A DNA stretch of 64,000 bases from Salpingoeca rosetta (Eukaryota > Protista > Choanoflagellata), in NCBI GenBank assembly GCA_033442325.1, contig JAWQFM010000015.1:1338858-1402857 (forward strand), written 5' to 3'. Of the stretch, positions 2,239-61,513 are shown one piece after another. Within the stretch, counting starts at the first letter, position 1; each line of letters starts with the position of its first letter. Both the position numbers and the translations under genes were made by a program. The notes below the pieces were generated by a model that saw only the letters and a program-made list of their open reading frames with translations, was not told where the DNA came from and did no database searches.

Positions 2239-4707
2239 TCACGTCAAGGAAGAGTGGAGGTGGGCGTCAAAGCAGCTGCTGGCGAGCGTGGGCAGGCAGA
2301 CTGGAACGATGGTGCTCAGGGCTGTGCCTTGAGAACACTCGCGGCAACAGTAGCCGGTCTTCTTGCCGCAGATGCAGCAGCGCAGTCGCGTGTCCTTCGC
2401 ATGCCCGTCCGCATAGTAGGGGTGCAGTCGGAGCAGCATGGGCAGGTGCACCGACAGCGGCGCATTGCGACTGCTGCTTGCTGCTGTTGCTGGGGCGACG
2501 CTTTGTGCCTGCTGCTGCTGTCCCTGGTCGCGCAGTGGCGCCTGATGGCGATCGTGTTGTGGTTGTGGGTGTGGTTGTTGTTGATGTTGCTGCCGTTGCC
2601 GTCGTGGTTGCTGTTGCTGCCGTTGTCGTCGCTGTGGCTGGACGCCGCTGGGTGCAGGTGCGCTGGTCGGTTTATCTGCAGTGTTGGTGGCCAAGTCCTT
2701 CGCCAGGAGGAGGCGAAAGCGCCAGAAGGGCGTGTGCTCCTCACCCCAGCGATGGCAAAGCATGAGGTATGCATCGGTGATGCAGATGCCAACGAGCGTG
2801 ATGAGGAGGTGACGAGCGGGCGCGTTGGTCGTGAATGCTTCCGCTAGCAACCGCGCACCTTGAGAAAGGACGCCGTGCATTGCAGCCTTGCGCCTGCTGC
2901 TGCAGTACAGATGTGCAATCGGCGACTGTGTGATTGCGTCGTCGCTGTTGTCGTGACGATGCTGTGTTGCATCAGGGCTGCGTGTTGAGACGAACGTCAT
3001 CACACCCCGAGCAGCGCGCCACGCATGGGCGATGATGTAAACGGGGGATATAGCAGCACTACCACTGTGCACAATGCTGCTCAGGTCAACATCCGCTGTT
3101 GCCGTGAAGGTGCTCCCCATGGGCGCAGGCGTGTGATGTGCCAGCCACTCCTGGTGTGAGTGAGTGTGTGTGTGTGAGTGTGTGTATGTGTGTGTGAGAG
3201 CGTGTGTGTGAGTGTGTGTATGTGTGTGTGAGAGCGTGTGTGTATGTGTGTGTGTGTGTGCGTGCGTGTGTGTGTGTGTGTGTCACAGTCACATATTGCC
3301 TCACAAAGGCGAGTGCTCCCTCACCTTTGGGAAATGCCGTGTCATGGTCTCCACGTTGCCAATGAACTGCAAGCCCCTCCTCTTCAGCTCATATGCGGCT
3401 TGGACGGATGCGACGGCGGGCCCGCCAACGAGCATGCGACCGGAACCAGCGTACGCCTCAGCTGCATCTAACATCCACGCGCAGTTGCTGGCAGCAGGAT
3501 TGCTCCCATCCCCTTCGTCACCAGCAGCACCATCCTCAAAGTCGCTGACGTCCAACCACAACACGACACCAGATTCGCCGTCCGCGAGTGACCTGAGCTC
3601 CATCTCAGCGCCGCGCTCTGCACTGCATCCATGGGCCACACCGTCCATGGATGCACATGTGTCTGACGTGTGCGCGTGTAATACGAGGGTGCCGCCCGCT
3701 CGGAACTCACGTCGAGACGCGTTGAACATCGCAATCGCTGGCTCAACAGCAGCAAGGTTTGGGCGAAGCCGCTGCCCCTGATGTTGGTGTTGGTGTTGTG
3801 CAGGATCATCACCAGGAGCGTCAGGGACGACGGCTAGACAACTGAGGATTGCTTCAAACCGAGACCGCGACAACCCGAACGTCTGCTCGAACCTGAGACA
3901 AGCAAAGGTGTCGGAATCACGGTAGCTGTCATCCCAGCACTGGTGGAGAGGAAGGCCGAGGTGAGCCACGCCCACGAACGCTCCAAAGACACGCAGCATC
4001 TCCCCGGTGGTGGTCACACGCTGGCCCTTGGCGGCGAGGTTGGCTGATGTTGCGCTCACGAGCGCGTCCAGGAAGGTGCTGGGAAACGCAGCGAGGAAGA
4101 AGCCAAGCAAGTTGTCTGGCCGGAGCGTCAAGGCGGGCGTTGGCGGCGAGAAGGAGGGCGTTGGTCGACGTACGTGTTGCAGCGAAGACGCAGCGCGAGC
4201 GGGCTTCCACCACACGTGCTGCACGAGCACAGCCGCCGGCTCCTCTGCTTCATCTGGTTCGTGAGCGTGTGTATGCGCGCGGCTCTGCTGCGGTGAGCCT
4301 GAGTGTGGTGGATGCTGTGCGGGTTGGTTGCTTGGCTCGGGAACCTCTATCGCCTCAGCTGGCTCCAGTGCCTGCGTGTCTGCTTGCGCTGGCTGTATCG
4401 CTGCTTGCGCTGGTGTCAACCCTGCGCCAGTGCCATGCTGCGTGCCCGTGCCATGAGCAGCAGCTTGTCCTGTGTCCAGTTCCAGTGACCGTGTGGGCAC
4501 GGTGGATGCGCTGCCCGTGCTCCAAACAACACGCCAGCGCCGGCCCCTGCCTCGTCCTGTCTGCTCCTTGATGGTGCCCTTGACCAACCTTGTGTGTGCG
4601 CCTGGCCCAAACGCCTCGCACGCGCGGGCTACGCCAAAGGCAGCCACGGCAGACGCCACGACGCGGGCGCCAACACCAAGCTGCTTCGCCCTCTTTCGAG
4701 ACGACAT
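2239..4707 (-). CDS. piggyBac-transposase-derived protein (PGBD-like, ~764 aa), catalytically degenerate, C-terminal Cys-rich zinc ribbon
   Basis: Exons 4707-3325 and 3150-2239 join in phase 0 (FPK|EWL). DDE_Tnp_1_7-like motifs GEMLRVFG, LSRSRFEAIL, GLQFIGNV...FPK, AHAW...FVST; C-terminal RCCICGKKTGYCCREC...VC...SCFDAH. Confidence 0.75.
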
Positions 4708-12309: not shown

Positions 12310-15024
12310 ATGTCATCACAGAGGAAAACACAAACTTACAACAACAAACGCTCTGCTTTCTCTCGCATCGTGCCTTTGTGGTCAGCGATCAACGCCAGCA
12401 ACACGAGAGGAGTCATGGCTTCCACTTCACCGACCGATCTTGATGTGTGGGACACCCAGAATGAAGAGTGCGAGCAGGAACAACTACCACACATCCCCAG
12501 AGTTGAGAATGGCGACGCCATTCTCCCCGCTTTGCCTGAAACCGAGCCTTCAATGCACACTTCTCCGGCTGGTGCAACCCACCCTGCCCACCGTCTCCCA
12601 CCGGCACCGAAGGGTTCGAATACCGCCAAGGCCAAGGAGCAAGCCTCCATGCAGCAGTCCAAGCCTCTCAAACCCGGAATCAGTTCTGCTCAACTTAGTG
12701 CTGCTTTGAGCGAATCCCCAACCAAGAAGCCCAAGATCGATTCACCTGAAAGCGGCGCCACGAAGCGGACACATCGACGTGACATTGCGGTGCAGAAAGC
12801 ACCAAGTCGCGTAACGACCGCGAGCAGTGCTTCCTCGGCCAAGGACTCAAGACAAAGCAACACAAAGACCAGTAACACCAAGACTGCCAACAAAGAGTCC
12901 AGTCACACCACAGCAGCTCCGTCACGCCGCGTCTCCTCAACCTCGTCATCAGTCTCAACATGTGATTCTTCCTCAACGTTGTCTTCTCCAACGCTTCCGG
13001 GTGATACCTCAACCGCCTCGTCTTCCAGCACCAAGCAGACCACCAAGCAGACCACCAAATCGTCCGCTGTGCCCCCGCAAGCAACTGCATCGAGCACTGT
13101 CATGCCCTCGTCGAGCATTGACCCGGTGCCAACACCTCAGCCCAAAAAGAAGAAACCGACAGCGACCAGCCGACCCAAAGCCAACAGTTTCACTATGGCC
13201 ACCACAGCTAGTGAGGGCAACGCATCATCGTCCTCGTCGTCTTCTGGCTCCCGCTCTTCCTCGCCTTCGGTAAAACTAACCACCAAGCCCGTGGCCGGTT
13301 CAGCTTCAAAATCTTCGCCTGCTTCCTCCAAGCCAACCACAAAGCGGAAGAAGACAGCTGTGCGCGGAAAGGGTGGAGAGTCCAAGCAACCCACAGATAA
13401 GAAGGGCACGCCAACAAAGACAAGGCGTCGTCGTAGTAAGGCAGGCGCACCCTCCAGCGAGGACAACTCTATCTCTCCGCAGCGGTCGTCATCTACACAT
13501 GTGCCATCATCAGTTGGAGTGATGCCGGCCAGCGCGACCACACATGCACCAGTAGCAGCATGTGCGGCTTCACCAGGCTCGTCTGGGTCTCCCCGCGCCT
13601 CTGGTACGAATGGCGATGGTACTCGCGTCACAGCCACCACGAGTACATCAAACGGCACGGCCAGAGCGAGCGACGACGATGGCCAAGACCTGCCACTGCA
13701 GTTTGTGGCGCTGCGCTGTGTCAAGGAGCAGCTCCCACCAATCTTGCAGCCACACTTTCTGGAGAACATTGACATGCGCAACCCAAGCAGCACCATTGAG
13801 GAGATGCAGATGATGTACTGCTTCGTGACGTTCATGGCCATCAGCTCTATGACTGTGTTCGAGCAGAGTACCACGAAGCAGCAAGACTTGAAGGATGCTC
13901 TCAAAGCGTTTCAGGTGCGGAAAGATACGCTTCGGTTGGATCGCTCCGCTCTCGAAGCCCTGCTTCGCTTCCATGCCGAGATGATTGACCTGCGTATCGT
14001 TGCCGACGCGAGCGAGCTTGACGAGGCAACCATCATCAACGTCGGCAGCGACTCGGCCATCTTTGTCATGAACCCGTGCGGCGTGCTGTTCCGCGCCAGC
14101 GACATTGCCATGGACGAGGAAGCCACGGACCTCAATGACGACACGGCGGTGGGCGCGCTGTCACCGCCGCACATTGGCGACGACCCCGACCTCGACACGG
14201 CCGTCGGAGCCATGCACGCCAGTACCCCTGAGCAGCACGGCTTTGCCGGCGAATTTACGGAGCCGATTCGTGACCTGCAGAGCATTCCCACATCCCCGAT
14301 TGACCAGCAGCAAACGGGCACCGGCGCCCCCAACATCTACCCGCAACAGCAGGCCGTGGGTGCCAGCGTGTTTGAGCGCATCCGCACCGTGCTACTGTCC
14401 TTGGAGCTGGACATTGAGAGAGACAGCGTTGACAAGGCTGCACGGTTGCCGTTTGATGAGCTTGGCGGCATCCTCATGTTGGTGCCCAACTTCAACTCCC
14501 TGTACGCACAGACGCGCTCGCGTGCACAGCAGTTCTTGCAGCAGCAAGGCGTTCCCGAAGACAAGGTGCTGGTGGTGAAGTGCAACGCAGCGTGTGCTGA
14601 TGAAGTGAAGACTTTCTGGCGGGGGGTGGAGACGAACAGGGACAAGCTGTTTGTGGTGCTGCATGATGAAGCGCACTGGGCCATCGACAGGTCACCAAAT
14701 GATGACAGCTCAAGTGGTGTGGCTGACCTGTTCCTCAACCAGCCCAGAAACAAAGGGGTCAAGAACGCACGCAACCTTGTGCGCTTGCTGGTCACAGCCA
14801 CACCCTATGCTCTGCAGACCGGGAAATCGGCAATCCCTTTGGTCAATGAGATCCACTGGGATGCCGTCACAGGCGGCAGCGAAGAATCGTCTGGTGAGAG
14901 AGTGTGTGAGAGAGGGTGTGTGTGCGTGTTTATGTGTGCGTGTACACGTGTAAGTGTAGTTGCCGCACCTTGTCAAGCAGTTCTCACGTAATGATCGTCC
15001 ACACACACTCACATGCAAACATGT

Positions 15025-15091
<67 letters not shown>

Positions 15092-18000
15092 AGAGAACCA
15101 CGGGCCGCGGTACTTTGGGATGTCCGACCTGCAGGGGCAACATAAGGACCCCAAGCGACAGCGTCTTGTCATGGACAGTTCATTTCATGCTCTGGTGTCG
15201 GAGTGCGTTGGGCGTCGTAAGCCAGGCACACGCGAACAACTCATGGCTAAGTTTTTCCAGTGTTACGAAGCGGCCTTCTTGCTCGCTTTACATGATATCA
15301 TGGGGACAAAACTGCTAGACCGAGAGGAACTGGAGAGCCACACGACACCCTTGACGCTGCGCATGATCACCCGCTTCCTCAAGGCGACGACCAGCACCAA
15401 CGGTCACGGACACATGCTCCTCATCCGTGTTGTGAGCAACCCCATGGGCCGCGCGTTGACGTTGAGGCTGAGAGAGCTTCGCGCCAAGCTTGGCCTCGAC
15501 AAGCGGTTTGCGGTATTGCAGGACACCAGCGCCGACCCGCTGCGACGCGTGCTTGAACTTGATGAGCGCAGCTCCGAGTGCCTCTCGCGACTGCAGCAGA
15601 TGACGGGCGCGAGTGGCATTGCCAGCTATGAGCAGCTGGAGCACCTTCCCTGCATCCTCGTGCTCTGTGACAAGGGCCGCATGGGCGACACCTTCCCCAA
15701 GTCGCTGCAATACTACGACCTCCGCCTGCGCTACGGTAGCTCCTCCTCCTGCACGCGCACCTACATGGAACAGGACCTCGGACGCATGTTCCGGTACGCG
15801 CGGAGTCTGGACGAGCTGCCCATGTGCCTGTTGCCGCCAACGGCACACGAGTGCCTCCAGCGAAGCCTCATACACCTCTCCCCCGACCGTAAGGTGTGTG
15901 CGTTTATTGGCGTATGTATTTTTGTGTATGTGTGTATATGTGTGTGTTATATGTGTTCATCATCATGTATGTGCGTGTGTTGATGTGTGATGGATCATCC
16001 CCACATTCCAACTACTTGCATCCCGCCCTAAGCTTGTATGTACAAACACACACTCCCGTGTCAGCCCCAATTACTTCTTCACGCTCACCGTCTGTCTCCT
16101 CTCACTCTAGGCGAACATTTCAAAGCCACCCAAAGGTGAACAGATACCTCGACCAAAACCGAGTGAAAACTGGTCATCACGGAACGATTCCCTCTTCTAC
16201 CGCACGTATGCGCGCCCAACAAGCAAGAACTACGATGAGGGCAACCGCCGGGGTACAGACCCACGTCGCTTCCTCCTGCAGGGCAAGCCGCAGGTGGGGA
16301 AGACGGGCGCATACCTGTGGGCGCTCAAGCTGCTCGCTGAGCACCTCAACATGCCACCAGGGCCCACAGAGACGGAGGAGGTGGTGGTGTGCTGTGACGA
16401 TGACGACTTTGACGACGAAGGCAACGAGCGGGAACTTGACATGGACGAGGATGAGCAGCAGCAGCAAAACCACCGCGGCGTGCTGCCTGTACACACAGTG
16501 GTGCAATCCCTACCCTTTGTGGCGCCACAGCCCGGCAAGTATGGCGCCATCATCATGGACCAGCGTGTGCACGCAGCGCGGCTGGCAGCAGCAGAGGCAG
16601 CGGCACACGGCGACAATGGCGACGTTGTTGTGGATGGTGCACCCGGGAACCGGTCACGACTCGTGGTGCGCAAGACTGTGAGCAGCGAGTATGCGCTCAT
16701 GGCGCGACCACAGCCGCCGTCAGCTCAGGCGGCAGCAGGTGGCAACGCTGTCGTGGCCGAGTTTGCGGCGCCGGTCGTGGCTGAGCTGAGCGTGAACAGC
16801 GACGACGAGATGAACCGTGAGAGGACGCTGGGCAGCCGATGGCACATTCCCGCAGCCAAGGCGGTCCTGTTCCAAGGGCTCATCAGCCGTGGCGACGACG
16901 GTACTGCTGCTACGTTTGAGCGCATTCGTGTTGAGGACCTTGACATGCCCGTCGTGTTTATGCCGTCGAGTGGGCGTGCCGCCATCGGCCTCCTCGACCT
17001 CAGCAGAACACTTCGCAGTCGTCAGAGCAACAGCAGCGGGAACAGCAGCACAAGCAGCAGTGACAACAACGGCAGTGGCGATGGTGGTGTTCACAAAGTG
17101 CTGCAGGTGATTGTGGTGAAACAGGACGAGTTTGACGCCTATTGCACGCACTACCCTGACGTGGTGGTGTGTGCGCTGCCCGAAGCTGCAAGCAGCCCTG
17201 ACAAGGGCATTGGTGCGAGCCGCGACTTCATCAAGCGGTTTGCCACGCTCAACCTCGACCTGACCCGCCACGCAGCGCGTGCTGGCGGTGTGAGGCTGGG
17301 GCGGGTTGCGAGCCTCATCCTCATGCTGGACGACTCGTGCTTGGTGTTCAAGCGCGCCGTCGTGAGGCAGGATCCCTGCGACTTTCACACTGCTGATGAT
17401 GTTGATGTTGTGGACGGCGCCCAGCATGGCGGTGCGAGCGACGATCACCAGCGAGAGTGGAAGTGGGACTGGGCGAACCGTGAGAACCGCAGCGAGTTCA
17501 CCATGGAGGACGTGCCGCTGCTGCACGTGCTGCAGCACATGCTGAGCGACCCTGACTTGCACAGGTACGCGCTGATGGGCATTTCGCGCTGGCGCCCGTT
17601 CTTGCGCAACATGCAGAGCGCGTACAAGCGGGCGCATCCGTTCTCGTTCCTGCTCCTGAACGTCGATGTGACGCGTGACGTGCACTACGAGGCAAACGAT
17701 CTTCTCTGCGAGGACATCCGCTTCAACGAGCGCTTGAACGCGCGTGATTTGTTGTTTGTCAAGTACTGCCGGTTCGTGTTGCTGAAGAAGCAGTTGGCTG
17801 AGGGCGGCTGCAGCGCCCTGTTGGAGAGGGCGCACGTGGATGCACAGAACGAGACACATTCGCGCACGTTCGAAGTTGCTGCTCTGCCAGACACTGGTAA
17901 TGATTTCAGTGCGAAACTCGCTGTCACCCTCGATAACATCCCGACTGCTGAGCTCATTGCTGCTGCTGAGGGTGACGCGAGTGCACTGTTGGACCGTCTG

Positions 18001-18558
18001 GCAGACCACCTCGTCACGATCCTGGGACCCGGTCTCGTGTCATTGCTGCAAATGGAGCTTGTTGAGCCCCGCATGCTGTGCATGCCTGCAGGCACATCAT
18101 CGCGGCCACATCAAGTGCAATGCCGAATCTGCCTCAAGGAACCTGGGCAGCAGCTGGACATGGTGGGATACACCCGCCTTCGAAGCACCCTCGCGTACAT
18201 TGCGACGGTCGCACAAACACAGGCGTCAGTCCCGCTATCCATCGTGCTGGACTTTGTGCGCAAACATTTGATCCCTGTGCCTGCAAGCACGCGCGTCTTC
18301 ACAATTGGCGAGCGGCCTGAACGCGACGCGAACGTACCCATCGCAACTGCCCCAACAGCCGTCATCGCATCCTACACCACAAATCCAATTGAAGTGAGGG
18401 CTCTGACAAGCAACTCTGAGTGGCAATGCTTGCTCGTCGACATGTACCATGCTACTGGCGAGCATGAGGGCCTGAGATTCCTTCTGTCCGTGGCGCCGGC
18501 CAACTCTGAAGCCTATTACTACCTCCACTTGGGCTGGGTGCTTGCGATCAAGCGATAG
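12310..18558 (+). CDS. GREB1: GREB1/GREB1L-like protein (~1943 aa): permuted SF2 helicase-like region plus C-terminal TAGT/JGT-type glycosyltransferase
   Basis: Exons 12310-14893, 15094-15893, 16111-18558 (5832 nt, in frame). Motifs LFVVLHDEAHW, LPCILVL..KGRMGDTFPKSLQYYDLRL..CTRTYMEQDLGR, PRRFLLQGKPQVGKTGAYL, GIGASRDFIK, ILMLDDSC, FLLLNVDVT..LCEDIRFN, KKQLAEGG resemble GREB1 throughout. Alternative start at 12415. Confidence 0.88.
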
Positions 18559-18579
18559 ATGTGCCGCGTGTAGTATCAG

Positions 18580-18633
<54 letters not shown>

Positions 18634-18749
18634 CATCGTGTGAAGTGTATGTTGTACGTGCGCGTCGTCTTGATACTTCCGCCATTCTCTCTTAAAGGTT
18701 TATTCCTTCTCACACACCCACCAAACTTCACCCCTCCCTCCCTCCGGTA

Positions 18750-19087
18750 TCATTGCTCCTTCCTCTCCATCTCAAGTGTTGTTTGCAGCGCATCAAACAG
18801 TGCGTGTGACCGTGCAACACTCACGTGCAGCCACTCCACCACGTCGTTGTCGTTGTTGTTCCTCTTACCACGGGTCTCCTGTTTGTGCCCTTGCCTTTGC
18901 CTTTGCCTTTGCCTTGTTCTTTTTGTGGTCACATGCTTAAAGTCGCAGTGCAGTAGCGCCAGCTCCTGGTACCTGTTGCACGCCAATACACGGTTTTGTT
19001 GGAGTGGTTTGGAAGGTGTGAGGAGAAGGCAGGGGTGGCGGAGGTGAGGCAGAGGGATGCAGAGGAGAGGCGAGGCAGTGACAAACG

Positions 19088-19169
<82 letters not shown>

Positions 19170-19189
19170 TACACACACACGCATACACG

Positions 19190-19223
<34 letters not shown>

Positions 19224-21598
19224 TACACACACACACGCATACACGCATACACACACACACACCACTCGGCCTCTGCGCGCTGTTCGACGGCCGTGTACTC
19301 CGAGGTCATGAGCGCGACGAGAAGATTGAGGAGGAGGACAACAGCCAGCAGCATAAACCCAACAAAGTACACGTGCTGCAGCCACAGGAGTTCGGGGTAG
19401 GTTTCGCGCGCATGCGACGCCGCCGCTGTGGCCACGCTGCCACCATCACTGCTGCTGCCGCCGCTGCTGCTGTTCACTGCGGTGGTTCGGTCCAGATGGT
19501 TGGTGTCGATGAAGGGGCCTTCGAGGCCAACGATGACGTTCATCTCGCCAAACAGCATCATGAAGACGGAGAGGAGGGACGCCAGCACGGTCGTGTGTCC
19601 TTCTGCACGCGCACGATAGACGCAGAAGAAGGCCAAAGCAAAGCCCGCAATGCCAAGCACAAGCACGAGCAGGAACGAGCGCAAGCGTGCAACCATGCGG
19701 GCCACCATCTTCATGAACACGCCCGTGCTGCGGAAACCGCGCAGGAAGTACATGGTGCCAAAGGGGATGCACAGCGCGGCGGCAGAGGCAAGCGCGTACT
19801 GCTCCGGCAGTCGCAACGCGTGCAGGGCAAACGTGGCGGCACTGAGCGCATAGGACAGCAGGAGAAGCGTGCGCCAGCCCTCATGGAGCCGCCGCCAGCC
19901 GCCGTGAAGCAGTAGCCACGGCCCAGCAAGCAAAGCAAGCAGCACCACCAGCAGGCCAAGCGCAGTCCAGCCAGCCACCACATGCCACGACGGCGTGGTG
20001 GTGGTGAGGCGACCCGGAGTTGCCGTCAGCAGCGTTGGACGGTCCGAGGTAAGATCGTCGCGCGCAACGTGGACAAGGGACGCCAGCATGGTAACAGCAA
20101 ACACGCTGTGCAACGCGAAGAGCGCCAGGAAGGTGCGCCGAACGCGCGTGTGCCAGTGCCAAAGCACCACACACTGGATCGCTGCTGTCGTAAACACGTC
20201 CGTCTGTCCATGCTGCGCACAGTAGCTGAGGAGGTCAAGGTGGCGGTGGAGGTTCGGCAGTGCAACAGCGAACGTGCTCACGGGTGCTGCTGATGCGGTC
20301 GTGGTCGTGTTCGTGTTTGTGGTCTTCCAAGCACCCTTGTTGCTGGCGAGATTGCCATTGTCTGTGCGGTGCAATGCAGTGCCTTGCGTCGTGCTGCAGT
20401 GGGGAAGAACGGTGAATGCGAGGCCACTCTCCACGGTGACAGTGGCGTGGGAGTGCAAGGCTGGGCTGCATGTCACCACAGTGTCCAGGAAAGGCGGCAG
20501 CAGCCGAGGAAATGTCTGGGCGAGCGGCAGCAGCGCAGCCGTCCAGCCCAAGCGCGTGCTGTGTTGGTGTTGATGATGACGATGATGATAATTATGTTTG
20601 TTGTTGCGCAGTGAGACAAAAGGGAATAAATGGTCATGTCACGGAATGTCACATCACACCATGTAACGTAATGTAACGTGAACTTTCGACGCATGTGTGT
20701 GTGTGTGTGCCTTTTGCTCAAATCCACTTCCTCCTCACCCCTCACCCCTCACCCCTCACCCCCTCACCCCCCGCCACCTCCCTCACCTTGACGTGGGTTG
20801 GTGCTTGATGTTGGAGAGGATGGCTTGCACGGCGCGCCGCTCGTGGCGATCAATGGACCACAGCAGAGGCGATGATACCATTGATGACGATAGGAAAGTG
20901 TGGTGAGGGGTTTGGTGAGCGTGCTCAGCGGTGGGGTGGCGTAGTGAAGCTGGGGCGGAAGGGTGTGGCGGCGTGAGGGCGAGTGGACGCTGGGGCAGTT
21001 CAATGAGGCCGCCGACGACGACGTCAACGTTTGCATCGCTGCTGACGTGCGCTAGGGCGTGGTGCAGCAGTGTCTGCTGGCTGCCCTTTGTTCGCGCCAT
21101 GCACAGCGGGTAGGACGTTGTCATGCACCGCGCAACTACTTCTGCTTGCACGGGTGTCGGCAGCGCGTGCGTTGTCTGTTGACACGTGTCCAATACACGT
21201 GACATGCACCATGCAGCGAACCCGCTGTCAATGTCCCACACGCGCACCACGCCATCTCGGCTCACGCTCACCACCTACAGAACTCAAGGGCAAAGGCAAG
21301 GATAACGAAAGATTCGGAATCGATGAGACACAGCGTGTGGTACTGAGACACAGGAGAGAGGTGACAGACGGCAACTCACTCGAGGCGCTACCCTTGCGTC
21401 TGTCAACAACAATTCCAGGCACACACAGCCAGCACACAAAACACATGTGTGCAAGCCCTCTCTGCTATCACAAGCCATATACCCACCCACACACACATAC
21501 AAGCCATGTACCCCCTCCCCCAGACCCAGACCCACCCACATCCACACCCACATCCACCCACACACCCCCCCCCCCCCCCACCCACACACACACACACA

Positions 21599-21649
<51 letters not shown>

Positions 21650-22389
21650 CCCACACATACACACAGACAGACAAACACACCTGGGTGTCGTTGTGGGTGA
21701 GGGCAAAGGCGGTGGCTGCATCAGTCCGGTCTTGCTGGAAGGTGAGCAGTGGAGCCAGCGTGGACTGGTCCCAGACCACGATGCGATTGTCCTTGCCAGC
21801 CGTGACAAGATACTGGTCTGCAACGTTGGCCTGTACAAACAGCACAAAGGACGCGTGTGCGTGCAACGTATGCATTGCTGCTGCCGTAGCCACATGCCAC
21901 ACCATCACCAGCCCATCTGCTCGTCCAAACACACACACACACACACACACGCACGCACGCAACAAGTGCAGAGTGAGTCGCATTCGTCAACAGTCTCACG
22001 GACAACTGAAATGTCCTTACCTATCACCACGTGCATCGTTCAAGTGCTCCAAAACAAACAGTTGTACAAAACACATGTACACCGCTCACCTTCACCGCCC
22101 GTGACAAGGTGATCTGCATCTTTCCAGCTCAAGCACTTGACGGCGCGCGTGTGTCCAACCAGGATTTGTTGCGGCGACACAATCTCCAGCTCATCATGTC
22201 CAGCACCTTCACAACGCAAGCGCAGCGCCGTCCTGCGTGAGATTGTGAAGTGCATGCGGTCATGCAGACGCGCATACGAATTCCTGCTCGTTGACATCAA
22301 CACAACTACGAACCTCCCCACACTCGCGCACGCACGCACGCACTTCACAACACCCTCACTCACAATACAGCTTGCCCCCTCCCCCAACA

Positions 22390-22451
<62 letters not shown>

Positions 22452-24184
22452 AACACACTCACTCACACACACACACCAACACACTCACTCACACACAAAC
22501 ACACACACACACACATACACACCTGCTGTGCTCCAGTCCCAGATGTGCACGACAAAATCGCCGCCTCCTGTGGCGATGGTGCGACCTGTTGGGGAGAATG
22601 CGCCACACACCACCCGTCCCGCGTGCCCACGGTACCATCGCACGAGCCCAGGCTCGCCTCCTCCAACGCCCTCACCACCACCACCACCACCACCACCGCC
22701 ACTGCTGCTGCTGCTGTTTGTTGTCGTCAGCGTGAGGACGGCAGCCCCCGTGTTGGTGCAGACAAGAAGGCCTTTAGAATCGGCACTGACGTGAATGCTG
22801 CGCACGAGGCCCGGCAGCTCCACAATCACGGGCAGTGAAGGTGGGCTGGTATGTGCAGCCGTTGTGCAGTCAGGTTCAGCACCGATTTGCGACAGAACAA
22901 CCATGTGCTCAATACCAACCGCCACACAGCGCCCATTTGGTGTACACGCGCACACGCGTGGGACACCAGCGCACGGTTGCTCCATTCGTTGCAGCACGTG
23001 CCCACTCGTGGCGGAGATGATGAGCACCTCATTGTGGGTGGTCGCAACAACAACGTCGCCACCAAACCCTTGCAGTGCACAGCAAGACGTAAAGGGCGCG
23101 GCCCTGTGAGGCACAGCAGTCTCATCCAGCAGTGACGGAGAGGTTGCACACTCGTCAAAGGTAAAATAGCGAGCTCTGCCCTCTTCTTGCTCGTGTTCAA
23201 GCGTATGGTCGTGGTCTCCTTGTCGAATGTAACAGCCATCGGCACCAAAATCGCCGTCGCCATGACTGGCGTCAGCACCGGTGATATGCGTGGTGTTCTC
23301 GTCATCGTTGTTGGCGGCACACGAGGCGGCACTGCTTCCGCCACCAAACGCTGCGAATGCGACGGTTTTGCCTGCAGGCACAGTTGCTGCTGGCGTGAAT
23401 GACCTGCGCAGACCGCAGGACGAGAGATCCCACCCAACACAGCAGCCAGCCCGATCCGTGGAGAAGAGCAGGTCAGTGCCGTCGTGTGAAAAGCGCAACG
23501 ATGTGACCCAGTCTTGGTGTGCGTGGAGCGTGAACAGCAATGCACCGCTCTGTACATCCCACATAAGAACAATGCCCGCCTCCCCACCAGCCACCACCCG
23601 ATTATGGCGCGGCGACCAGGCGACTGCTCGCAGCGAGTGGTGGTGACCATGGAATCTGCGCTCAACCACACCATTGACAGCAGCAGCAACAGGTGATTGC
23701 ATAACACCTGTCACGCCAGACATGTTGTTGGCTATCTCCGCTCCCCCGTTTCCATTTACACCACCACCACTACCACCACCACCACCACCACCGGAAATGT
23801 TGTCCAGGATGGCGATGAAGCCGTCAGCACCGACGATACACGCGCGGGAGCCCGTGCCATCGAACGCAGCTGCTGTGAGCCGCCCTGGGGCAAATGATGT
23901 CCACACAAGCCGGTGTGTGTTCGCTCCTGTGTTCACCCACCACAGCTTGGCTTGGCCCGCGTTGCACACGGAGAGATACGCGCGGTCCCATTCCCACAAT
24001 CCGAGCGTGCGCGCCTGTGACCGCGGCAGCACGCACCCGGCGATGCAGCGAACCACGTCAAGATGGCGCCCAAGAACCAGGTCCGAAGAAGCGTGTGTCT
24101 CGGGGTTAGGGACCAGGTCTCCATCGCGGAGCTGGACGCACACGTGAATACTGTGGTCTGCTGCCGCTGCAAACACAATCGCGC

Positions 24185-24232
<48 letters not shown>

Positions 24233-25161
24233 GCCCATACACATCTGAGTGCTGGTTCTGTGTTACGTGGGGTGCTGTGACGTGGCCCAGGAAGCAGCAT
24301 TCGACGTCTGTGTTGAGGTCGTACACACCCATGTCGCAGCAGCCAGCACCGAGCGAGCCCACAGTGACCTGCCCGTCTTCGAAACAAACGGCCATTATCG
24401 CAGGGCGCACTGAGGAAGGGGTTGAAGTCAGGCCACGGCGCTGTGGATATGCGGAAGGATCGCCGACACCACTCGCATCGGTACTGTTGTGGTACATTGT
24501 CAGCGTGTCTGGCGGTGCAAGGCAGTGCATGGCGACAATAGGTGCCGGGTGATTGCGCGTGCCGAAGCGGAGGGCCTGGCACGCTGCATGCACAGACACG
24601 ACGCTGATGGTTCCGTCAGGGTGGGCCACGGCAGCAGCGGTGCTGGTGGTGTTGGTTGACGGTGTACGCGAAGATGGGATGATGCAGCACGACTTGGCGG
24701 GGGAGTCCAGGAGCTGCACGTGCTGTCGTGCTGGAGGCAGGTTGCGTGTCCAAGGTGCGTGCAGCGATGCCAGCGCGTGTATGTGCGCTGGCGCTGTTGT
24801 TGTAAATGACCAGAGGCACGCCATGTCGTCGCTTGCCGCAGTCGCGAGAATGGGGCGAGAGGGATGCACAGCCAGTGACAGAACGAAACCAGCATGTGCG
24901 GTGACGTGATGTTGGCATGTGTAGTCTGCCATGCTCCACACGCAAACACGTGCGTCCTCTCCGGCGCTGAAGAGGCGGTTACCGCTGACATCAAAGGCCA
25001 CTGCCTTGATGGCGCTTGTGTGGCCTTGAAGGCACACAGTATTGAAGTGCTGCTGCTGCCGCCGTTTTCGAGCTGTTGACGACCCACTGTTGGCGCTGCG
25101 CTTTCCTTCTTGTTGCCGCTGCATACCGTTGTTACGCCCATCAAGCGTTGGTACGCACGCT

Positions 25162-25193
<32 letters not shown>

Positions 25194-25388
25194 TGTTGCT
25201 GAGGTGGACAATTTGCGGGGAAGAAGCCACACGCGCACGATGTGGTCGCCGGATCCTGTGGCCACCGTGGTGTGTTGGCGCGGATGCCAGGCCACGGCGG
25301 TGACACGTGCATGCATGCAATCGAGGACGGCACAGCGTCGCTGTGGAGACGGTCGCATAGGGTCGGTTTGATAGGGATGTTAGTGGAT

Positions 25389-25423
<35 letters not shown>

Positions 25424-25521
25424 AGACAAGAGGGCAAATGCTCGTTTCGCCATAGAGGAGATACATACAGTTTGTCGGGTGCACGATTGTGCGTACGTGG
25501 AAACCGACGCTCACACACACA

Positions 25522-25554
<33 letters not shown>

Positions 25555-25886
25555 CATGGTAGATGCTTTGGAGATGGAGATGATGTGTGCTGCGCCGTCG
25601 TTTCCGCCCAGGGCGAGATACTTTCGATCCGGGCGCCAGGCGACAGCGCGAAGCGTGGTCACCATGTCCAGCCTGAGCGGGCACGCATGCGTGTGGGAAT
25701 GTGTATGTGTGTGGGAATGTATGTGCGTGTGTGTGTGTGCGTGCGTGTGTGTGTGTGTGTCAAGGCATGACGAAGGTACATCCACACGGGGAACATGACA
25801 ACAGTATAACGTAGACATGCAGAAAAAGCGACTCAGTGAGTGAATGAATGACTGGTGTCATACCCATTCGTACCCAGCAACACACA

Positions 25887-25917
<31 letters not shown>

Positions 25918-27214
25918 GCGCACACACACCGCACCGAGAGATGGTGTTGAGGGAGCCCGTGGCAGAGACGGTGAGGAGGTGGCAGGCGTTGTTGCTAATG
26001 GCCGCGAGAAGGGAGTGGCTGCGTTTGCCCAGCTTCGCCGTGCTTGCAAGCGCAATGGCAGTGATTGGGGCCGGCATCCTGTGCTTGCAGGCAAGCCGGC
26101 GGGTCGGCACATGCCAGGCGCACACAGTTCGGTCCACGGAGGCAGTGATGAGCAGCTCATTGCTTGCTGCAAAGGTGGCTGAGGTCACGGCGTCTTGGTG
26201 CCCCAGCAGCTGCCCAACAAACACACCATCGTCACTCCACAGGCGCACCGTTGCATCGGCCGAACACGTGGCAAGCAGCACGGCGTCATCACCGCGCTGT
26301 TGCATGAACGTGCATGCAAGCACAGCGTCGTCGTGTGTTCGCCCGGCGTTTCGGCCGCCAAGCCCGTCCACGGCACGACCCCGACTGCTGTCCTGCTCAC
26401 AGCCCTCGCTCTCACCCTCAAGCACATGAGAACGGTGGTTGCTGGTGTCTGTGCCAGCTGCCAACGACTGCACCTCTACGCCACGCTGCAAATCCCACAT
26501 GCGCAGTGTACCGTCAGTGCTGCACGTGGCCACCATGTCGTCACCCTGAACATTGTTATTATTGTCCACGAGGGCATCAGCCGGTGGTGCGCGCCAAAGC
26601 ACAACGCCAGTCACCACATCCGTGTGTCCCGTCAGAACCTTGAGCAAGGCAAGACTTTGCGTGTTCCACACGCGCACGGCTTGGTCTGTGAAGCCGGCAG
26701 CAAGCAGGCCGGCGTCGGCGCTCAGCGACATGGCGGTCACAGCCACGCCTGTGTCGCTCCCATGCACTGTTTGCACGTTTTGCTTGCGCTGCCTCTTGGG
26801 ACCAGAGCCAACGTGCCAGATGTACATGCGGCCATGGCTGTCACCGACTGCAACTGTGCTGTTGGCGTCATAGGCAGCACTGCAACATGTGGCGTCGGCC
26901 TTCAGCTTGATGCGCGCCGTCACGTGGCCCGTGTCCAGGTCATGCAGGGTCGCCAGCTTCCCACCCACAGCGGCGTATGCGTACAGCAGCGGGAGCAGCA
27001 CGCCCGCTGTGAGGATGTCATCGAGGTCAGTCGCCACTTGCTTCGTGTGCCGGGAGGCAGCGTGTTGCTTCGCCAGTGTCAGGTACGCGTGTGCGCGGCG
27101 CGGCTGTAAGGGGGCCCCTTGCGCTTTCGTCTGTCCTTCTGCTTGCTGGCCGTACCTGCTGTTGCTGTTGTGCCTGGATGCTGTAGTCGAGGACAGCGGC
27201 GACCTACCATCAGG

Positions 27215-27282
<68 letters not shown>

Positions 27283-28254
27283 GAATTGGTTGCGGCTGCG
27301 AGATTGTGGCGGCTGTTGTATTGCTGAACAGCCAATCAGGTTCATCCTGGGACGGCGGGCACTGTTGCGTCTTGGCGAGCTGTGGCACCGAGCTGGCTGG
27401 TTGGATGAGGGACAAGGGGCGAGGCGCATTAGTGCTCTGGAAGGAGAGCGGGCGGGAGAACGTGGTGAGGCCAATAAGATTGCCTGCAGGCAAGGTCTTG
27501 GCGGCCGGGGAGTGGCTGTGATGAAACGTGCTGGCGTCAGCCCCAGGTTCCAGGCGCAGTGTGGTTGGGCGATGCCGGGTGTGCAGCACAATGACGTCCT
27601 GCGTCCTGTCGTCCGTGAGAAGCAGCGAGCTTGTGTCAGTTGTGGACTGGGGTGTGTCTGCTGCTGCAGCGGGCACGGCGATGGAGTCGATGATGCGGCC
27701 ATCTTGCGTGTTGACCAGCATTACGCATCCATCTCCTGTCAGCACACACAACAGTTCTGACGACTGCACGAAACCGCACTGCGCCGCATCGCGCACCTCC
27801 GTTGCAACCTCCTGCAAACGTGCATGTTTGTTTGTGTGTTTGTTTGTGTGTTTGTTTGTTTGTTTGTTTGTTTGTTTGTGTGCATGGTGTGTGTGTTTGC
27901 ATGTGTGTGCACGCGTGTGTGTGTGTGTTTGCATGTGTGTGTGTGTGTGTGTGTGTTTGCATGTGTGTGCACGCGTGTGTGCAAGTGTGTGTGCAGGGAA
28001 GAGTCAAACGAGATGTCATGTCACATCATGTCACGTTGTTGCGCAGCCACCCGAATACAAACACACTCATCACTGCAAGTCAGGCTATCTCAACAAGCCA
28101 TGTCACAGCCTTTCTAACAACATACGGTGGAAGAGTTCCATAGAGTGCATGTTCCAGCCTGGGAGCGGGCTGCGAGCCATCGGTTTCCAGGGGTGCCCCC
28201 TTCTTGCTGGGTGCACCTCAGCTCCACCCAGCTCCTCTCGTTGCTGCTCTGCAT
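18750..28254 (-). CDS. WD40-repeat / TRP-like cation channel fusion (~2440 aa, 9 exons)
   Basis: Proposed exons 28254-28126, 27811-25935, 25672-25555, 25340-22519, 22232-22090, 21916-21681, 21274-20787, 20558-19263, 18972-18750 sum to 7332 nt. Many GH...WD repeats, then a multi-TM region with [15 protein letters not shown], pore FMMLFGE, S6 [14 protein letters not shown] and TRP-box-like AEAEWYQELA. One junction near 22.2-22.5 kb has an alternative in-frame solution. Confidence 0.85.
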
Positions 28255-59287: not shown

Positions 59288-60562
59288 ATACAGGAGATCT
59301 TGGAACGGCACATGTGAATCCTATGAACACGCTCGCGTACACACTCACATACACACTCGCATACACACTCGCATACACACTCGCATACACACTCGCATAC
59401 ACACTCGCATACATACTCACACAAACACACACCCTCACAAACACACACCCTCACACACTCACACACTCACACACTCACACACATTCAAACTGCCATTACC
59501 ACAGCCGCAGAAGCCCGCGCCACGGTCGAGCGAGCCCGCGATTGTGCGCCCGCTCAACACGAACATCCGGGGCAGCCTTGAGTCCATTCTCATGAAGAAG
59601 CTCAACATGGGCAGTGACGGCAGCGACGCTGGTGGAAGCGGTGCGAGGGACAACAAACCTGCGCCCGGAAAGGTGTCGGAGAATGTCAAGTCGAACCTGG
59701 CGGCGCTGCTTGGCAACAAGTTCAAGCGGAAATCACGCAAGGCCGCCGCCAAGCAGGCACCACCAAGTATGTTGTGTCGAGAACAGCGTTGTGTGGCGTT
59801 TTGTTTGATCACTGTGAGGTGACACAAACACACAAACACAAACACACACTTCCACTCACACACACTTCCACTCACACACACTTCCACTCACTCACTCACT
59901 CACTCACTCACTCACTCACTCACTCACTCACTCACTCACTCACTCACTCACTCACTCACTCACTCACTCACTCACTCACTCACTCACTCACTCACTCACT
60001 CACTCACTCACTCACTCACTCACTCACTCACTCACTCACTCACTCACTCACTCATACTCACTCACACACTCACATACACGCAGCGATGTTTGGGTTCCCG
60101 CCACCACCACCTCCCCCGCCACCAATGGTTCCACCCCAAATGAATGTGGCGACCGTGAGCATCCCACCACCGCCGCCACCGCCACCTCCGCACGTGCAAG
60201 ACGGCATGCAGCGACCAGGGATCATGCTGCCAGGGCTTGGACCAAGCCCACCACCACCCCCATTTTTCCAACACGCACATGCGCATCCACATCCACATGC
60301 ACATGGCAGTGGCGGTGGTGGCGCGTGTGACAGCCCGCTGTGTCAGCAGGAGAAGGCGGATCTGAAGCAGCAGGTGGCGGACTTGCAGCACCAGTGCCAG
60401 CAGTACCGAGCGAAGACGCTTGAGCAGGCAGCCATCATTCGGCAGCTGCAGCAGGAGTGGCACAAGCCAAGCAAGACCAACAACAACAACAACAACAACA
60501 ACAACAGCAACAACAACAACAATGCGAGCCATGGCAACGGGACCAATGGCATTGGCATTGGC

Positions 60563-60594
<32 letters not shown>

Positions 60595-60964
60595 GCCGTT
60601 TCGGATCGTGGCTGTGACTGGAGGCGAGGATGGCCTCTCGGCGCTGGACACCACCAACAACAGCAGCCGCCGCAACGACGTGGATGTGATGTACGATGTG
60701 CCCAGCGACTCTGAGCAGGATCACGCCAACGACGACGGCATCAGCAGCAGCAACAGCCACAGCAACGCGGACAGCATGCACGATGATGAGGGTGGGCTTG
60801 CGCGAGTGCACTTGCATCGTCAACAGCAGCCACTTCAGGACCACCACCACCACCACCACCATGAACAACAACAGCACAGCATACAGGCGCTTGAGGCGGC
60901 TGCGTACGACAACGCAAGCTGTGACACGTTCGACACAACGGACGTGTCAGTGACAGCAGCACGT

Positions 60965-60996
<32 letters not shown>

Positions 60997-61513
60997 GCCT
61001 CCAGCACCTGCACCAGCACCGGCGGCGACAAAGGGTGGTGGGTCACCAAAGCGGAAGGGGTGGTCTGCGGCGGTGCGCATGCTGCGGGGAAGCAAGCACC
61101 AGCACAAGGACACGCCCGCAACTGCACAGGAGCCTGAGAGCAAGGCTGGCGAGGCGGAACTGGCTGCACGCGAGCACAGGGCTGCTGCTTGCCTGCAGGC
61201 ATGCGCGCGTGGGTTCCAGGCGCGCGTGGACGTGTTCCTGATGCGAGCAAAGGCGCACGACCGGCAGCGGGACGTGGAGGCGCTGTTCCGCAGCATTGAG
61301 ACGAGCTGCGTGCGTGCACGCAAAGGCATGCTGAGCACGAGCCACGCAAGTGCCATTTCCCAGCACGAACTGCGCACGCAGCGCGGGGCGCTTGTCCTCA
61401 TGCACGGACAGCGGCACACGGATGGCCAGCAGCTGGGCCGGGACGGTACGGCCGAGAGCCAGATGGACGATGTGCAGCAGCAGCAGCAGCACAACAACAA
61501 CAACAGCAACAGC

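What the first reader, a model, noticed from the sequence alone, without database searches (positions are those of the whole stretch)
16940..17815. JGT/TAGT-type glycosyltransferase fused to the helicase: candidate DNA-base glycosylation system in a unicellular holozoan
Seen: PVVFMPSSGRA, GIGASRDFI, MLDDS (DD at 17329-17334) and CEDIRF (ED at 17710-17715), the GT-A nucleotide-sugar/metal and catalytic positions. Knowledge: the GREB1 C-terminal domain is related to the kinetoplastid base-J glucosyltransferase and phage TET-associated glycosyltransferases, while human GREB1 has been reported to glycosylate protein. Inference: with an intact ATPase in the same chain, this may be a translocating enzyme that glycosylates modified bases (e.g. 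hmU/hmC). No TET/JBP partner is visible in this window.
Basis: partly seen in the sequence, partly recalled or inferred. Interest (0 to 1): 0.8.

Follow-up and report, generated by a model that had tools for sequence, protein, structure and literature searches.

The report
Choanoflagellate GREB1 relative with intact helicase
This is an expressed gene of the choanoflagellate Salpingoeca rosetta. It encodes a relative of the human GREB1 protein in which a helicase-type motor with all its working motifs is joined to a sugar-transferring enzyme related to phage and trypanosome DNA-glycosylating enzymes. The family and the DNA-glycosylation idea are already published, and what the enzyme puts sugar on is still unknown.

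Summary
All four peptide motifs sit at the stated coordinates, inside a Pfam TAGT domain (E 7e-20). The gene has three exons on the + strand (12310-14893, 15094-15893, 16111-18555), and stranded RNA-seq and a spliced transcript contig support that model. It is Salpingoeca rosetta PTSG_06081, annotated as a hypothetical protein.

The architecture is a disordered N-terminus with NLS-like basic clusters, then a circularly permuted SF2 helicase (Pfam cpSF2-GREB1), then the TAGT GT-A glycosyltransferase, then a lineage-specific tail. Helicase motifs I, II (DEAH), III, V and VI are intact. Animal GREB1/GREB1L have lost II, III and VI. The residues conserved across the GT family are all present, including five of the six mutated in the human catalytic-dead GREB1. 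In the GT-domain tree the protein groups with animal GREB1/GREB1L.

DNA-base glycosylation by GREB1 relatives was predicted in 2013, and choanoflagellate GREB1-like proteins were reported in 2021. Choanoflagellates are reported to lack DNMT1/3, and I found no TET/JBP source. The only tested relative, human GREB1, glycosylates a protein. So this is a member of a known family. It is useful because an ATPase-competent GREB1 relative sits in an organism that, from my own knowledge and not checked here, can be genetically manipulated.

The scan had already noted this same gene on an overlapping window.

The parts
12310..14893 (+). Exon 1, 861 codons plus 1 nt. The ATG at 12310 is the first in frame. 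GenBank's model starts at Met36 (12415). The donor is G|GTGAGA.
   Evidence: P0001 (1908 aa) equals the spliced model minus its first 35 residues. The transcript contig reaches back to about 12314 if collinear.
12607..13749 (+). Low-complexity N-terminal region rich in Ser/Thr/Pro/Ala/Lys (about aa 100-480), with NLS-like basic clusters KKPK, KKKK, KRKK and RRRR. No Pfam match.
   Evidence: No hydrophobic segment anywhere in the protein reaches transmembrane level (maximum KD19 = 1.46).
14332..16356 (+). Circularly permuted SF2 helicase/ATPase module (spliced aa 675-1210), interrupted by both introns. Motif II DEAH is at 14665-14676, motif III (VTATP) at 14791-14805, motif V (CDKGRMGDTF) at 15666-15695, motif VI (QDLGRMFR) at 15771-15794, and Walker A (GKPQVGKTG) at 16282-16308, which is last in the chain.
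   Evidence: Pfam PF20692 E 4.9e-86 on P0001. Motif coordinates. Motif comparison. AF2 model with pLDDT 81.2 and pTM 0.84. SF2 fold matches at Z 11-13.
14894..15093 (+). Intron 1 (GT..AG, phase 1), containing a long (CA)n microsatellite.
   Evidence: Transcript contig X2 record 9 leaves exactly 10 nt between 14889 and 15100, as the model predicts.
15094..15893 (+). Exon 2 (helicase RecA2 part, motifs V and VI).
15894..16110 (+). Intron 2 (GT..AG, phase 0).
   Evidence: The joint 15891>16109 (cut +2) is seen in 17 + 25 stranded RNA reads and one transcript contig.
16111..18558 (+). Exon 3: Walker A segment, acidic/poly-Q linker, TAGT domain, C-terminal region and the stop codon at 18556-18558.
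16894..17826 (+). TAGT-family GT-A glycosyltransferase domain (spliced aa 1390-1700; P0001 1355-1665). It has two low-confidence Ser-rich/acidic loop insertions.
   Evidence: Pfam PF20691 at 72 bits. Family HMM envelope. AF2 model with pLDDT 82.8 and pTM 0.81. GT-A fold at Z 13-14. Phage TAGT proteins are the best viral structural matches, E 3e-12.
17827..18555 (+). C-terminal region of about 240 aa with no recognisable family. It does not match Pfam GREB1_C.
   Evidence: No Pfam hit. No BLASTP similarity to the tails of Saccoglossus GREB1L or the nearest relative P0002. Saccoglossus GREB1L (P0004) carries GREB1_C.
18394..18776 (+). Minor alternative 3' intron (GT..AG). It would replace the last 54 residues with 10 others.
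   Evidence: 8 reads in run X21 run on from 18393 into letters found uniquely at 18777.

Best explanation
The gene is Salpingoeca rosetta PTSG_06081, the closest choanoflagellate relative and probable ortholog of animal GREB1/GREB1L.

Shown:
- It is transcribed and spliced as one 1908-1943-aa chain.
- It has no signal peptide or membrane anchor, and it has NLS-like basic clusters.
- It carries a circularly permuted SF2 helicase module with every ATPase motif intact.
- It ends in a TAGT-family GT-A glycosyltransferase with all family-conserved residues.

Inferred mechanism:
- The motor binds a nucleic acid, most likely chromatin DNA, and burns ATP to move along it or to remodel it.
- The GT domain uses a UDP-sugar and a divalent metal held by the DD pair. 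The ED pair at the start of a helix acts as the base.
- The sugar is transferred with inversion onto a hydroxyl group met on that track.

My split for the acceptor is about 0.4 for a protein bound to the nucleic acid (as human GREB1 does with ER-alpha), about 0.3 for a hydroxymethyl-pyrimidine in DNA (as JGT and phage TAGTs do), and the rest for RNA or something else.

Animals later lost motifs II, III and VI of the motor but kept the transferase.
For: Identity and expression:
- The protein is a 100% match to PTSG_06081.
- Stranded RNA depth is 15-95, and both introns are confirmed.

Domains:
- cpSF2-GREB1 scores 290 bits and TAGT 68-72 bits.

Motor:
- GKT, DEAH, TAT, GRMGDTFP and QDLGRMFRY are all present. 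Animal GREB1/GREB1L show DQAH/DNSH/DHAH, TPT/SCF/TSF and QEIGL instead.
- The AF2 model is confident (pTM 0.84). The Walker A strand and helix, at the C-terminal end of the module, are modelled with high local confidence.
- The best Foldseek matches are the dsDNA translocases HsdR, RapA, DDM1, Chd1 and ISWI.

Transferase:
- The fold is GT-A.
- DD lies just past the end of strand 151-155 and ED at the start of helix 283-293 of the model.
- These residues are nearly invariant across 71 homologs.
- Five of the six residues mutated in the human catalytic-dead GREB1 have equivalents here.

Chromatin context of the family:
- Independent TAGT fusions to SNF2 ATPases (5 of 38 scanned), and single cases with a bromodomain and with a ZZ finger.

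Cellular location:
- No transmembrane segment or signal, and NLS-like clusters.

Relationship:
- The GT-domain tree puts S. rosetta in a clade with animal GREB1/GREB1L, SH-aLRT 97.
Against: - No biochemical data exist for this protein or for any non-animal GREB1-like protein.
- Motif integrity does not prove ATPase or transferase activity.
- The helicase-domain tree leaves the S. rosetta protein in a polytomy, so orthology rests on the GT domain and on search ranking.
- By VIA-align the motor is equally close to DNA and RNA SF2 enzymes, so the nucleic acid is not identified.
- The reported in-vitro activity of human GREB1 was low and showed no specificity between the two sugar donors tested, so even the protein-acceptor precedent is thin.
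- The animal-specific GREB1_N, GREB1_2nd and GREB1_C domains are absent.
Confidence: 0.55

Rival explanations
1. 2013 prediction. The protein is a translocating DNA glycosyltransferase that adds glucose or another sugar to hmU or hmC in genomic DNA, producing a base-J-like mark in a choanoflagellate.
For: - It belongs to the TAGT family.
- The nearest viral structural matches are phage TAGT proteins and a beta-glucosyl-HMC alpha-glucosyltransferase, E 3e-12 to 1e-9. That is much better than any solved GT-A, which reach only about 1e-4.
- The motor is intact, and its best Foldseek hits are dsDNA translocases.
- SNF2-TAGT fusions in relatives resemble the SNF2-hydroxylase fusion of kinetoplastid JBP2. 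The JBP2 architecture is my own knowledge.
- It has NLS-like clusters.
Against: - No known source of hydroxymethyl-pyrimidines was found. Choanoflagellate genomes are reported to have only DNMT2, or no DNA-specific DNMTs.
- No TET/JBP appears in the window or in any of the scan's notes on this genome.
- The GT domain is closer to animal GREB1, whose only tested member modifies a protein, than to any other homolog group retrieved.
- tblastn against 50,697 phage records found nothing.
Confidence: 0.3
2. The protein acts on RNA. The SF2 module is an RNA helicase, and the GT domain glycosylates RNA or RNP proteins.
For: - By VIA-align, DRH-1, DEAH/RHA and DEAD-box RNA helicases score within 1-2 Z units of the DNA translocases.
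- MDA5 and Dicer appear in the Foldseek list.
- TET/JBP and methylase families have repeatedly shifted to RNA in eukaryotes (PMC4738411).
Against: - No RNA-binding domain is present.
- The family's accessory fusions are chromatin-type: SNF2, bromodomain and ZZ.
- The top Foldseek matches are dsDNA motors.
Confidence: 0.1
3. The protein is a scaffold only. One or both enzymatic modules are inactive despite conserved motifs, and the protein acts as an adaptor, as GREB1 was first described for ER-alpha.
For: - Human GREB1 was long treated as a cofactor, and its helicase is considered inactive.
- The S. rosetta GT domain carries two long low-confidence loop insertions.
Against: - All ATPase and GT residues conserved in the family are kept in S. 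rosetta and its nearest relative P0002 despite only 36-40% identity. That argues for selection on catalysis.
Confidence: 0.05

Closest known systems
Human GREB1 / GREB1L (Shin et al. 2021, PMC7968844)
   Same: - Same core order: a circularly permuted SF2 helicase followed by a TAGT-type GT-A domain.
- The GKT loop is kept in both.
- R, DD and D of the human catalytic-dead mutant set are conserved.
- The GT-domain tree groups them, SH-aLRT 97.
   Different: - S. rosetta keeps DEAH, TAT, GRMGDTFP and QxxGRxxRY, which animal GREB1/GREB1L have lost.
- It lacks GREB1_N (the Zn-binding domain), GREB1_2nd and GREB1_C.
- It has its own disordered N-terminus and a C-terminal tail of about 240 aa.
- The equivalent of human R1737 is not conserved.
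- By my own knowledge (not checked here), choanoflagellates have no oestrogen receptor, so ER-alpha cannot be the substrate.
Kinetoplastid base-J glucosyltransferase (JGT) and phage TET/JBP-associated glycosyltransferases (TAGT, Pfam PF20691; Iyer et al. 2013)
   Same: - Same Pfam family, at 72 bits.
- Phage TAGT proteins are the best structural matches among viral proteins.
- GT-A fold with an acidic pair just past the end of the central strand.
   Different: - Phage TAGTs are stand-alone proteins of about 250-300 aa next to a TET/JBP gene, going by the family description and the target lengths. Here the domain is fused to a motor, and no TET/JBP partner is known.
- Sequence similarity to phage records is below tblastn detection.
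- No JGT sequence was retrieved here, so its relationship was not tested directly.
Non-GREB1 cpSF2-TAGT proteins of Capsaspora (CAOG_01586), invertebrates (Palaemon XP_068230443, Owenia CAH1775368) and many metagenomic protists
   Same: Same two-module core, with intact helicase motifs.
   Different: - They fall in other clades in both trees.
- They carry other accessory domains: LRR in Capsaspora and a ZZ-type domain in one Owenia protein, by its UniRef name.
SNF2-TAGT fusion proteins (e.g. P0085) and, by analogy, kinetoplastid JBP2 (SNF2 + hydroxylase)
   Same: A DNA-translocase-type ATPase joined to a base-modification-family enzyme.
   Different: - The motor family differs: SNF2 in normal motif order against a permuted DEAH-type SF2.
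- They form a separate clade in the GT tree, SH-aLRT 100.

Membership tests
TAGT / JGT-type glycosyltransferases (Pfam PF20691) | Scores above the family's curated Pfam threshold | tested here: met
   72.3 bits, E 7e-20, against a cut-off of 27.5.
TAGT / JGT-type glycosyltransferases (Pfam PF20691) | GT-A (nucleotide-diphospho-sugar transferase) fold | tested here: met
   AF2 model with pLDDT 82.8 and pTM 0.81. VIA-align Z 13-14, rmsd 3.2-3.7 over 173-188 residues, to GnT-I, POMGnT1, B4GALNT1, LH3 and SpsA. Foldseek matches to GT-A enzymes.
TAGT / JGT-type glycosyltransferases (Pfam PF20691) | Family-conserved residues: R of FxPSxGR, G and R of GxGxxR, the acidic pair DD, H, the ED pair, N | tested here: met
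   All fall on invariant or at least 90% conserved columns of a 71-sequence alignment, and all are present in S. rosetta.
TAGT / JGT-type glycosyltransferases (Pfam PF20691) | Association with a TET/JBP dioxygenase that makes the hydroxymethyl acceptor | tested here: inconclusive
   None among the Pfam families listed for 126 long ORFs of the window, but only 25 of 37 families were shown. The scan's notes for this genome mention none. The whole genome could not be searched with these tools.
TAGT / JGT-type glycosyltransferases (Pfam PF20691) | Transfers sugar to hmU or hmC in DNA | not testable with these tools
   Needs enzyme assays or nucleoside mass spectrometry.
GREB1 / GREB1L | cpSF2-GREB1 helicase followed by TAGT in one chain | tested here: met
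   PF20692 at 290 bits plus PF20691. A single spliced transcript.
GREB1 / GREB1L | Groups with animal GREB1/GREB1L in a tree | tested here: inconclusive
   The GT-domain tree gives a clade with SH-aLRT 97. The helicase tree gives an unresolved polytomy with animals and other protists.
GREB1 / GREB1L | GREB1_N (Zn-binding), GREB1_2nd and GREB1_C domains | tested here: not met
   Absent from P0001 and present in Saccoglossus GREB1L. The C-terminal tail shows no similarity.
GREB1 / GREB1L | Catalytically inactive helicase (as described for human GREB1) | tested here: not met
   Motifs II, III, V and VI are intact in S. rosetta and degenerate in all animal GREB1/GREB1L sequences examined.
GREB1 / GREB1L | O-GlcNAc transfer to a protein | not testable with these tools
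   Known only for human GREB1.
Active SF2 helicases / translocases | Walker A (GKT), DExH, SAT-like motif III, motif V, and motif VI with arginine | tested here: met
   GKPQVGKTG, DEAH, TAT, GRMGDTFP and QDLGRMFRY.
Active SF2 helicases / translocases | SF2 helicase core fold that incorporates the permuted Walker A element | tested here: met
   AF2 model with pLDDT 81.2 and pTM 0.84. The Walker A strand 527-531 and helix 538-552 have pLDDT of about 93. Z 11-13 over about 300-330 residues to FANCM, SNF2h, INO80 and DRH-1. I could not inspect model coordinates to check that the loop faces DEAH.
Active SF2 helicases / translocases | Nucleic-acid-stimulated ATP hydrolysis | not testable with these tools
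   Needs a biochemical assay.

The most novel reading that the evidence does not exclude
PTSG_06081 is a motor-driven DNA glycosyltransferase that writes a glycosylated base in the genome of an animal relative lacking DNMT1/3 and, apparently, TET/JBP. That would imply an unrecognised source of hydroxymethyl-pyrimidines or a new acceptor. It would also mean that animal GREB1 descends from a DNA-modifying enzyme whose motor was later disabled.
Probability: 0.2. Interest if true: 0.85.

Novelty: new member of a known kind. Interest (0 to 1): 0.45.

Why it matters
GREB1 and GREB1L matter in hormone-dependent cancers and in kidney and ear development, yet their chemistry rests on one study. The 2013 prediction that they descend from DNA-base glycosyltransferases has never been tested outside kinetoplastids.

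This analysis shows that the choanoflagellate relative still has a complete ATPase motif set, and that the motor was degraded only in the animal GREB1/GREB1L lineage. A second lineage with an intact motor survives in Capsaspora and some invertebrates.

By my own knowledge (not checked here), S. rosetta can be cultured and edited. One knockout plus nucleoside mass spectrometry and O-glycan blots could show what the ancestral enzyme glycosylates. If the answer were DNA, it would be a new epigenetic mark next to animals. If it were protein, it would support the view that GREB1-type O-glycosylation predates animals.

Tried and rejected
- The word-index protein search with exon 3 (815 aa) found nothing. 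This is an artefact of its length window, because full-length relatives have 1200-2100 aa. The exhaustive search then found 140 relatives.
- A sequence search of exon 3 against the PDB gave only a chance hit at E 0.3.
- tblastn of the GT domain against 50,697 phage records found no match. The phage link is visible only by profile and by structure.
- BLASTP of the C-terminal 249 aa against the tails of Saccoglossus GREB1L and P0002 gave nothing, so I rejected the idea that it is a diverged GREB1_C.
- I tried to read Iyer et al. 2013 (NAR) and 2014 (PNAS), but neither is held. I cannot say whether they already noted the intact helicase in protists.
- Literature searches for TET/JBP in choanoflagellates gave no explicit statement either way.
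- The Pfam census of the window's long ORFs listed only 25 of 37 families, so it excludes a local TET/JBP only weakly.
- VIA-align could not separate DNA motors from RNA motors, so I do not use fold similarity to name the nucleic acid.
- The 429-aa ORF on the minus strand (16720-18009), overlapping the GT domain, is not a gene. Stranded reads there are almost all of one orientation, the one expected for + strand RNA.
Full report
**Observation**

A script placed them at:
- PVVFMPSSGRA: 16948-16980
- GIGASRDFI: 17206-17232
- MLDDS: 17323-17337 (DD 17329-17334)
- CEDIRF: 17707-17724 (ED 17710-17715)

Pfam scores this stretch as TAGT, 'TET-Associated Glycosyltransferase' (PF20691), at 72 bits and E 7e-20, against a cut-off of 27.5.

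**Gene model and expression**

Pfam cpSF2-GREB1 (PF20692) hits lie on three collinear + strand ORFs. Reading the junctions gives:
- exon 1: 12310-14893
- intron 1: 14894-15093 (GT..AG, full of CA repeats)
- exon 2: 15094-15893
- intron 2: 15894-16110
- exon 3: 16111-18555, then the stop codon

The spliced CDS is 5832 nt with one stop, at its end.

Stranded RNA-seq of the same species covers all exons at depth 15-95. Almost all reads have the orientation expected for + strand RNA. The intron 2 joint is seen in 17 + 25 reads. A 5875-nt transcript contig skips both introns exactly as modelled.

The exhaustive protein search returned a 100% identical 1908-aa protein. It is Salpingoeca rosetta PTSG_06081 / XP_004992977.1 / UniRef F2UDM5, named 'hypothetical protein'. 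My model is the same protein with 35 more residues from an upstream in-frame ATG. Which ATG is used is not settled.

**Anatomy**

- Residues of about 100-480 are Ser/Thr/Pro/Ala/Lys-rich low complexity. They hold four basic clusters (KKPK, KKKK, KRKK, RRRR).
- No segment anywhere reaches transmembrane hydrophobicity. This is therefore a nucleocytoplasmic GT-A enzyme, not a Golgi one.
- The helicase module (spliced aa 675-1210) is circularly permuted. DEAH, TAT, GRMGDTFP and QDLGRMFRY come first, and the Walker A loop GKPQVGKTG comes last, in exon 3.
- An AF2 model built on 26 homologs is confident (pLDDT 81.2, pTM 0.84). The Walker A strand and helix have pLDDT of about 93.
- Foldseek's best solved matches are dsDNA translocases: type I restriction HsdR, RapA, DDM1, Chd1 and ISWI, at E 5e-6 to 1e-4.
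- VIA-align gives a generic SF2 list with DNA and RNA enzymes tied: FANCM, DRH-1, SNF2h, INO80 and DEAH/RHA, at Z 10-13. The fold does not identify the nucleic acid.
- The GT domain (spliced aa 1390-1700) was modelled on 71 homologs (pLDDT 82.8, pTM 0.81). It is a GT-A fold, with Z 13-14 to GnT-I, POMGnT1, B4GALNT1, LH3 and SpsA.
- DD sits just past the end of strand 151-155 and ED at the start of helix 283-293. These are the places where GT-A enzymes usually hold the metal/UDP-sugar and the catalytic base. That last step is inference from general GT-A knowledge.
- Among predicted viral structures, the best matches are phage 'TET-Associated Glycosyltransferase' proteins and a beta-glucosyl-HMC alpha-glucosyltransferase (E 3e-12 to 1e-9). 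These are much closer than any solved GT-A (about 1e-4).
- The last 240 or so residues match nothing.

**Relatives**

Only 140 cluster representatives out of 1.84 billion match exon 3, and only two score below 1e-30. The ranking is:
- the protein itself
- a EukProt transcriptome protein (P0002, 3e-47)
- animal GREB1L/GREB1 from stickleback, Saccoglossus and Amia (2e-29 to 4e-27)
- Capsaspora (5e-18)

A Pfam scan of 38 relatives found TAGT in 36 and cpSF2-GREB1 in 22. SNF2 plus Helicase_C occurred in 5. Single or double cases carried a bromodomain, ZZ, Methyltransf_8, OTU or a POLO box. GREB1_N and GREB1_2nd were each matched by one member and GREB1_C by three. In the per-protein scan all three were found in Saccoglossus GREB1L and in none of the four other proteins scanned individually, and P0001 has none of them.

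The motif census is the main added result:
- Every relative outside the animal GREB1/GREB1L clade with an alignable helicase region shows DEAH or a one-residue variant, plus [ST]AT, GxMGDTFP-like and QxxGRxxxY-like motifs; one protein (P0104) is degenerate at motifs II and V.
- Animal GREB1/GREB1L have DQAH, DNSH or DHAH at motif II, TPT, SCF or TSF at motif III, and QEIGL at motif VI. They keep only GKT.
- An invertebrate paralog group (Palaemon, Owenia) keeps the intact set.

In the GT-domain tree, S. rosetta, P0002 and a long-branch metagenomic protein form a clade with animal GREB1/GREB1L (SH-aLRT 97). The helicase tree leaves them in a polytomy with other protists. It shows a long stem leading to animal GREB1, and it separates the invertebrate paralog clade cleanly.

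The likeliest history is that the motor was intact in the common ancestor of choanoflagellates and animals and decayed on the animal GREB1 stem.

**Catalytic residues**

Shin et al. made their dead human GREB1 by mutating R1553, H1609, D1645, D1646, R1737 and D1742. Amia GREB1 has the same residues at a constant offset of 30. Through the alignment these map onto S. rosetta P0001 as R1382, R1464 (Arg, as in GREB1L and most of the family), D1500, D1501 and D1628. Only the R1737 position is not conserved, being Asp in S. rosetta. I did not have the human sequence, so this mapping is an inference.

**What is known already**

Shin et al. 2021 (PMC7968844, with Iyer and Aravind as authors) make four relevant points:
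- They describe human GREB1 as a Zn-binding domain plus a 'catalytically inactive' permuted SF2 helicase plus a GT related to JGT/TAGT.
- They show O-GlcNAcylation of ER-alpha.
- They admit low in-vitro activity with no specificity between the two sugar donors tested.
- They state that GREB1-like proteins occur in Choanoflagellatea, Ichthyosporea, Mycetozoa and other protists.

The proposal that GREB1 might glycosylate DNA goes back to Iyer et al. 2013, as relayed in PMC4111573 and PMC6163654. I could not read the 2013 paper, so I cannot say whether the intact-motor point is new.

**DNA or protein?**

For DNA:
- the family's ancestry
- the phage-like GT structure
- an intact motor
- the SNF2, bromodomain and ZZ fusions in relatives
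- nuclear-type signals

Against DNA:
- Choanoflagellate genomes are reported to have only DNMT2, or no DNA-specific DNMTs (PMC8330077; PMC11244446).
- No TET/JBP appears in the window (a partial listing) or in any note of the scan on this genome.
- The nearest tested relative uses a protein acceptor.

I could not search the whole genome for Tet_JBP, which is the obvious missing computation.

My odds are:
- about 0.95 that the protein is a GREB1-family cpSF2-TAGT enzyme
- about 0.55 that it works as an ATP-driven glycosyltransferase guided by a nucleic acid
- for the acceptor: about 0.4 protein, about 0.3 DNA base, and the rest RNA, another acceptor or none

**Verdict**

The finding is real, correctly read at the domain level, expressed, and a member of a known family. 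It is worth a bench test because it sits in an organism that, from my own knowledge and not checked here, can be genetically manipulated. It is not a new kind of system. The scan had already flagged this same gene on an overlapping window (s1-431377, s1-442064).

Noticed in passing
window 18394-18776: A minor alternative 3' intron (GT..AG). In one RNA run, 8 reads run on from 18393 into letters that match uniquely at 18777. This would swap the last 54 residues for 10 others ([10 protein letters not shown]). It was not listed for the second RNA run.
   Followed up: partly
window 16351-16441 and scattered sites 15382-17598: Run X21 (and some contigs of X1) carries a second allele or strain: many A>G/T>C-type differences at 10-35% of reads, and loose read ends on both sides of the acidic/poly-Q linker that suggest an indel there. 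Run X22 mostly lacks them.
   Followed up: no
window 14995-15091 and 18582-18632: Long (CA)n and (GT)n microsatellites in intron 1 and just after the stop codon. The reads tool skipped them as repeats.
   Followed up: no
window 12310 vs 12415: There are two candidate start codons. GenBank uses Met36 (12415). The transcript contig maps back to about 12314 if collinear, so whether the upstream ATG is in the mRNA is open.
   Followed up: partly
proteins P0065 (Palaemon carinicauda), P0117 and P0057 (Owenia fusiformis), with P0037, P0041, P0071, P0099, P0100, P0104: A separate clade of cpSF2-TAGT proteins whose named members are from invertebrates. It is distinct from GREB1/GREB1L and keeps the intact helicase motifs (ADEAHW, TATP, QELGRLCRY). 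The named ones are annotated only as uncharacterised. One Owenia protein is named 'ZZ-type domain-containing protein' by UniRef.
   Followed up: partly
proteins P0085, P0091, P0112, P0139, P0069, P0138: A well-supported clade (SH-aLRT 100) of metagenomic TAGT proteins. P0085 was shown to be an SNF2 ATPase + Helicase_C + TAGT fusion, and five of the 38 proteins scanned carry SNF2. Other relatives carry a bromodomain, Methyltransf_8, OTU or a POLO box.
   Followed up: partly
window 16720-18009, minus strand: A 429-aa ORF antisense to the GT domain. Stranded reads there are almost all of one orientation, the one expected for + strand RNA, so it is a by-product of high GC content.
   Followed up: yes
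window, long ORFs elsewhere (e.g. 59618-62581 +): The Pfam census of long ORFs shows an SH2 domain at 59618-62581 (+). Elsewhere in the window, with the ORFs not identified by the output, it shows several WD40 propellers, a Rubicon-homology domain, a protein kinase and a piggyBac-type DDE transposase domain. Earlier notes of the scan place a piggyBac-like gene at 2239-4707 and a WD40-bearing channel gene at 18750-28254.
   Followed up: no
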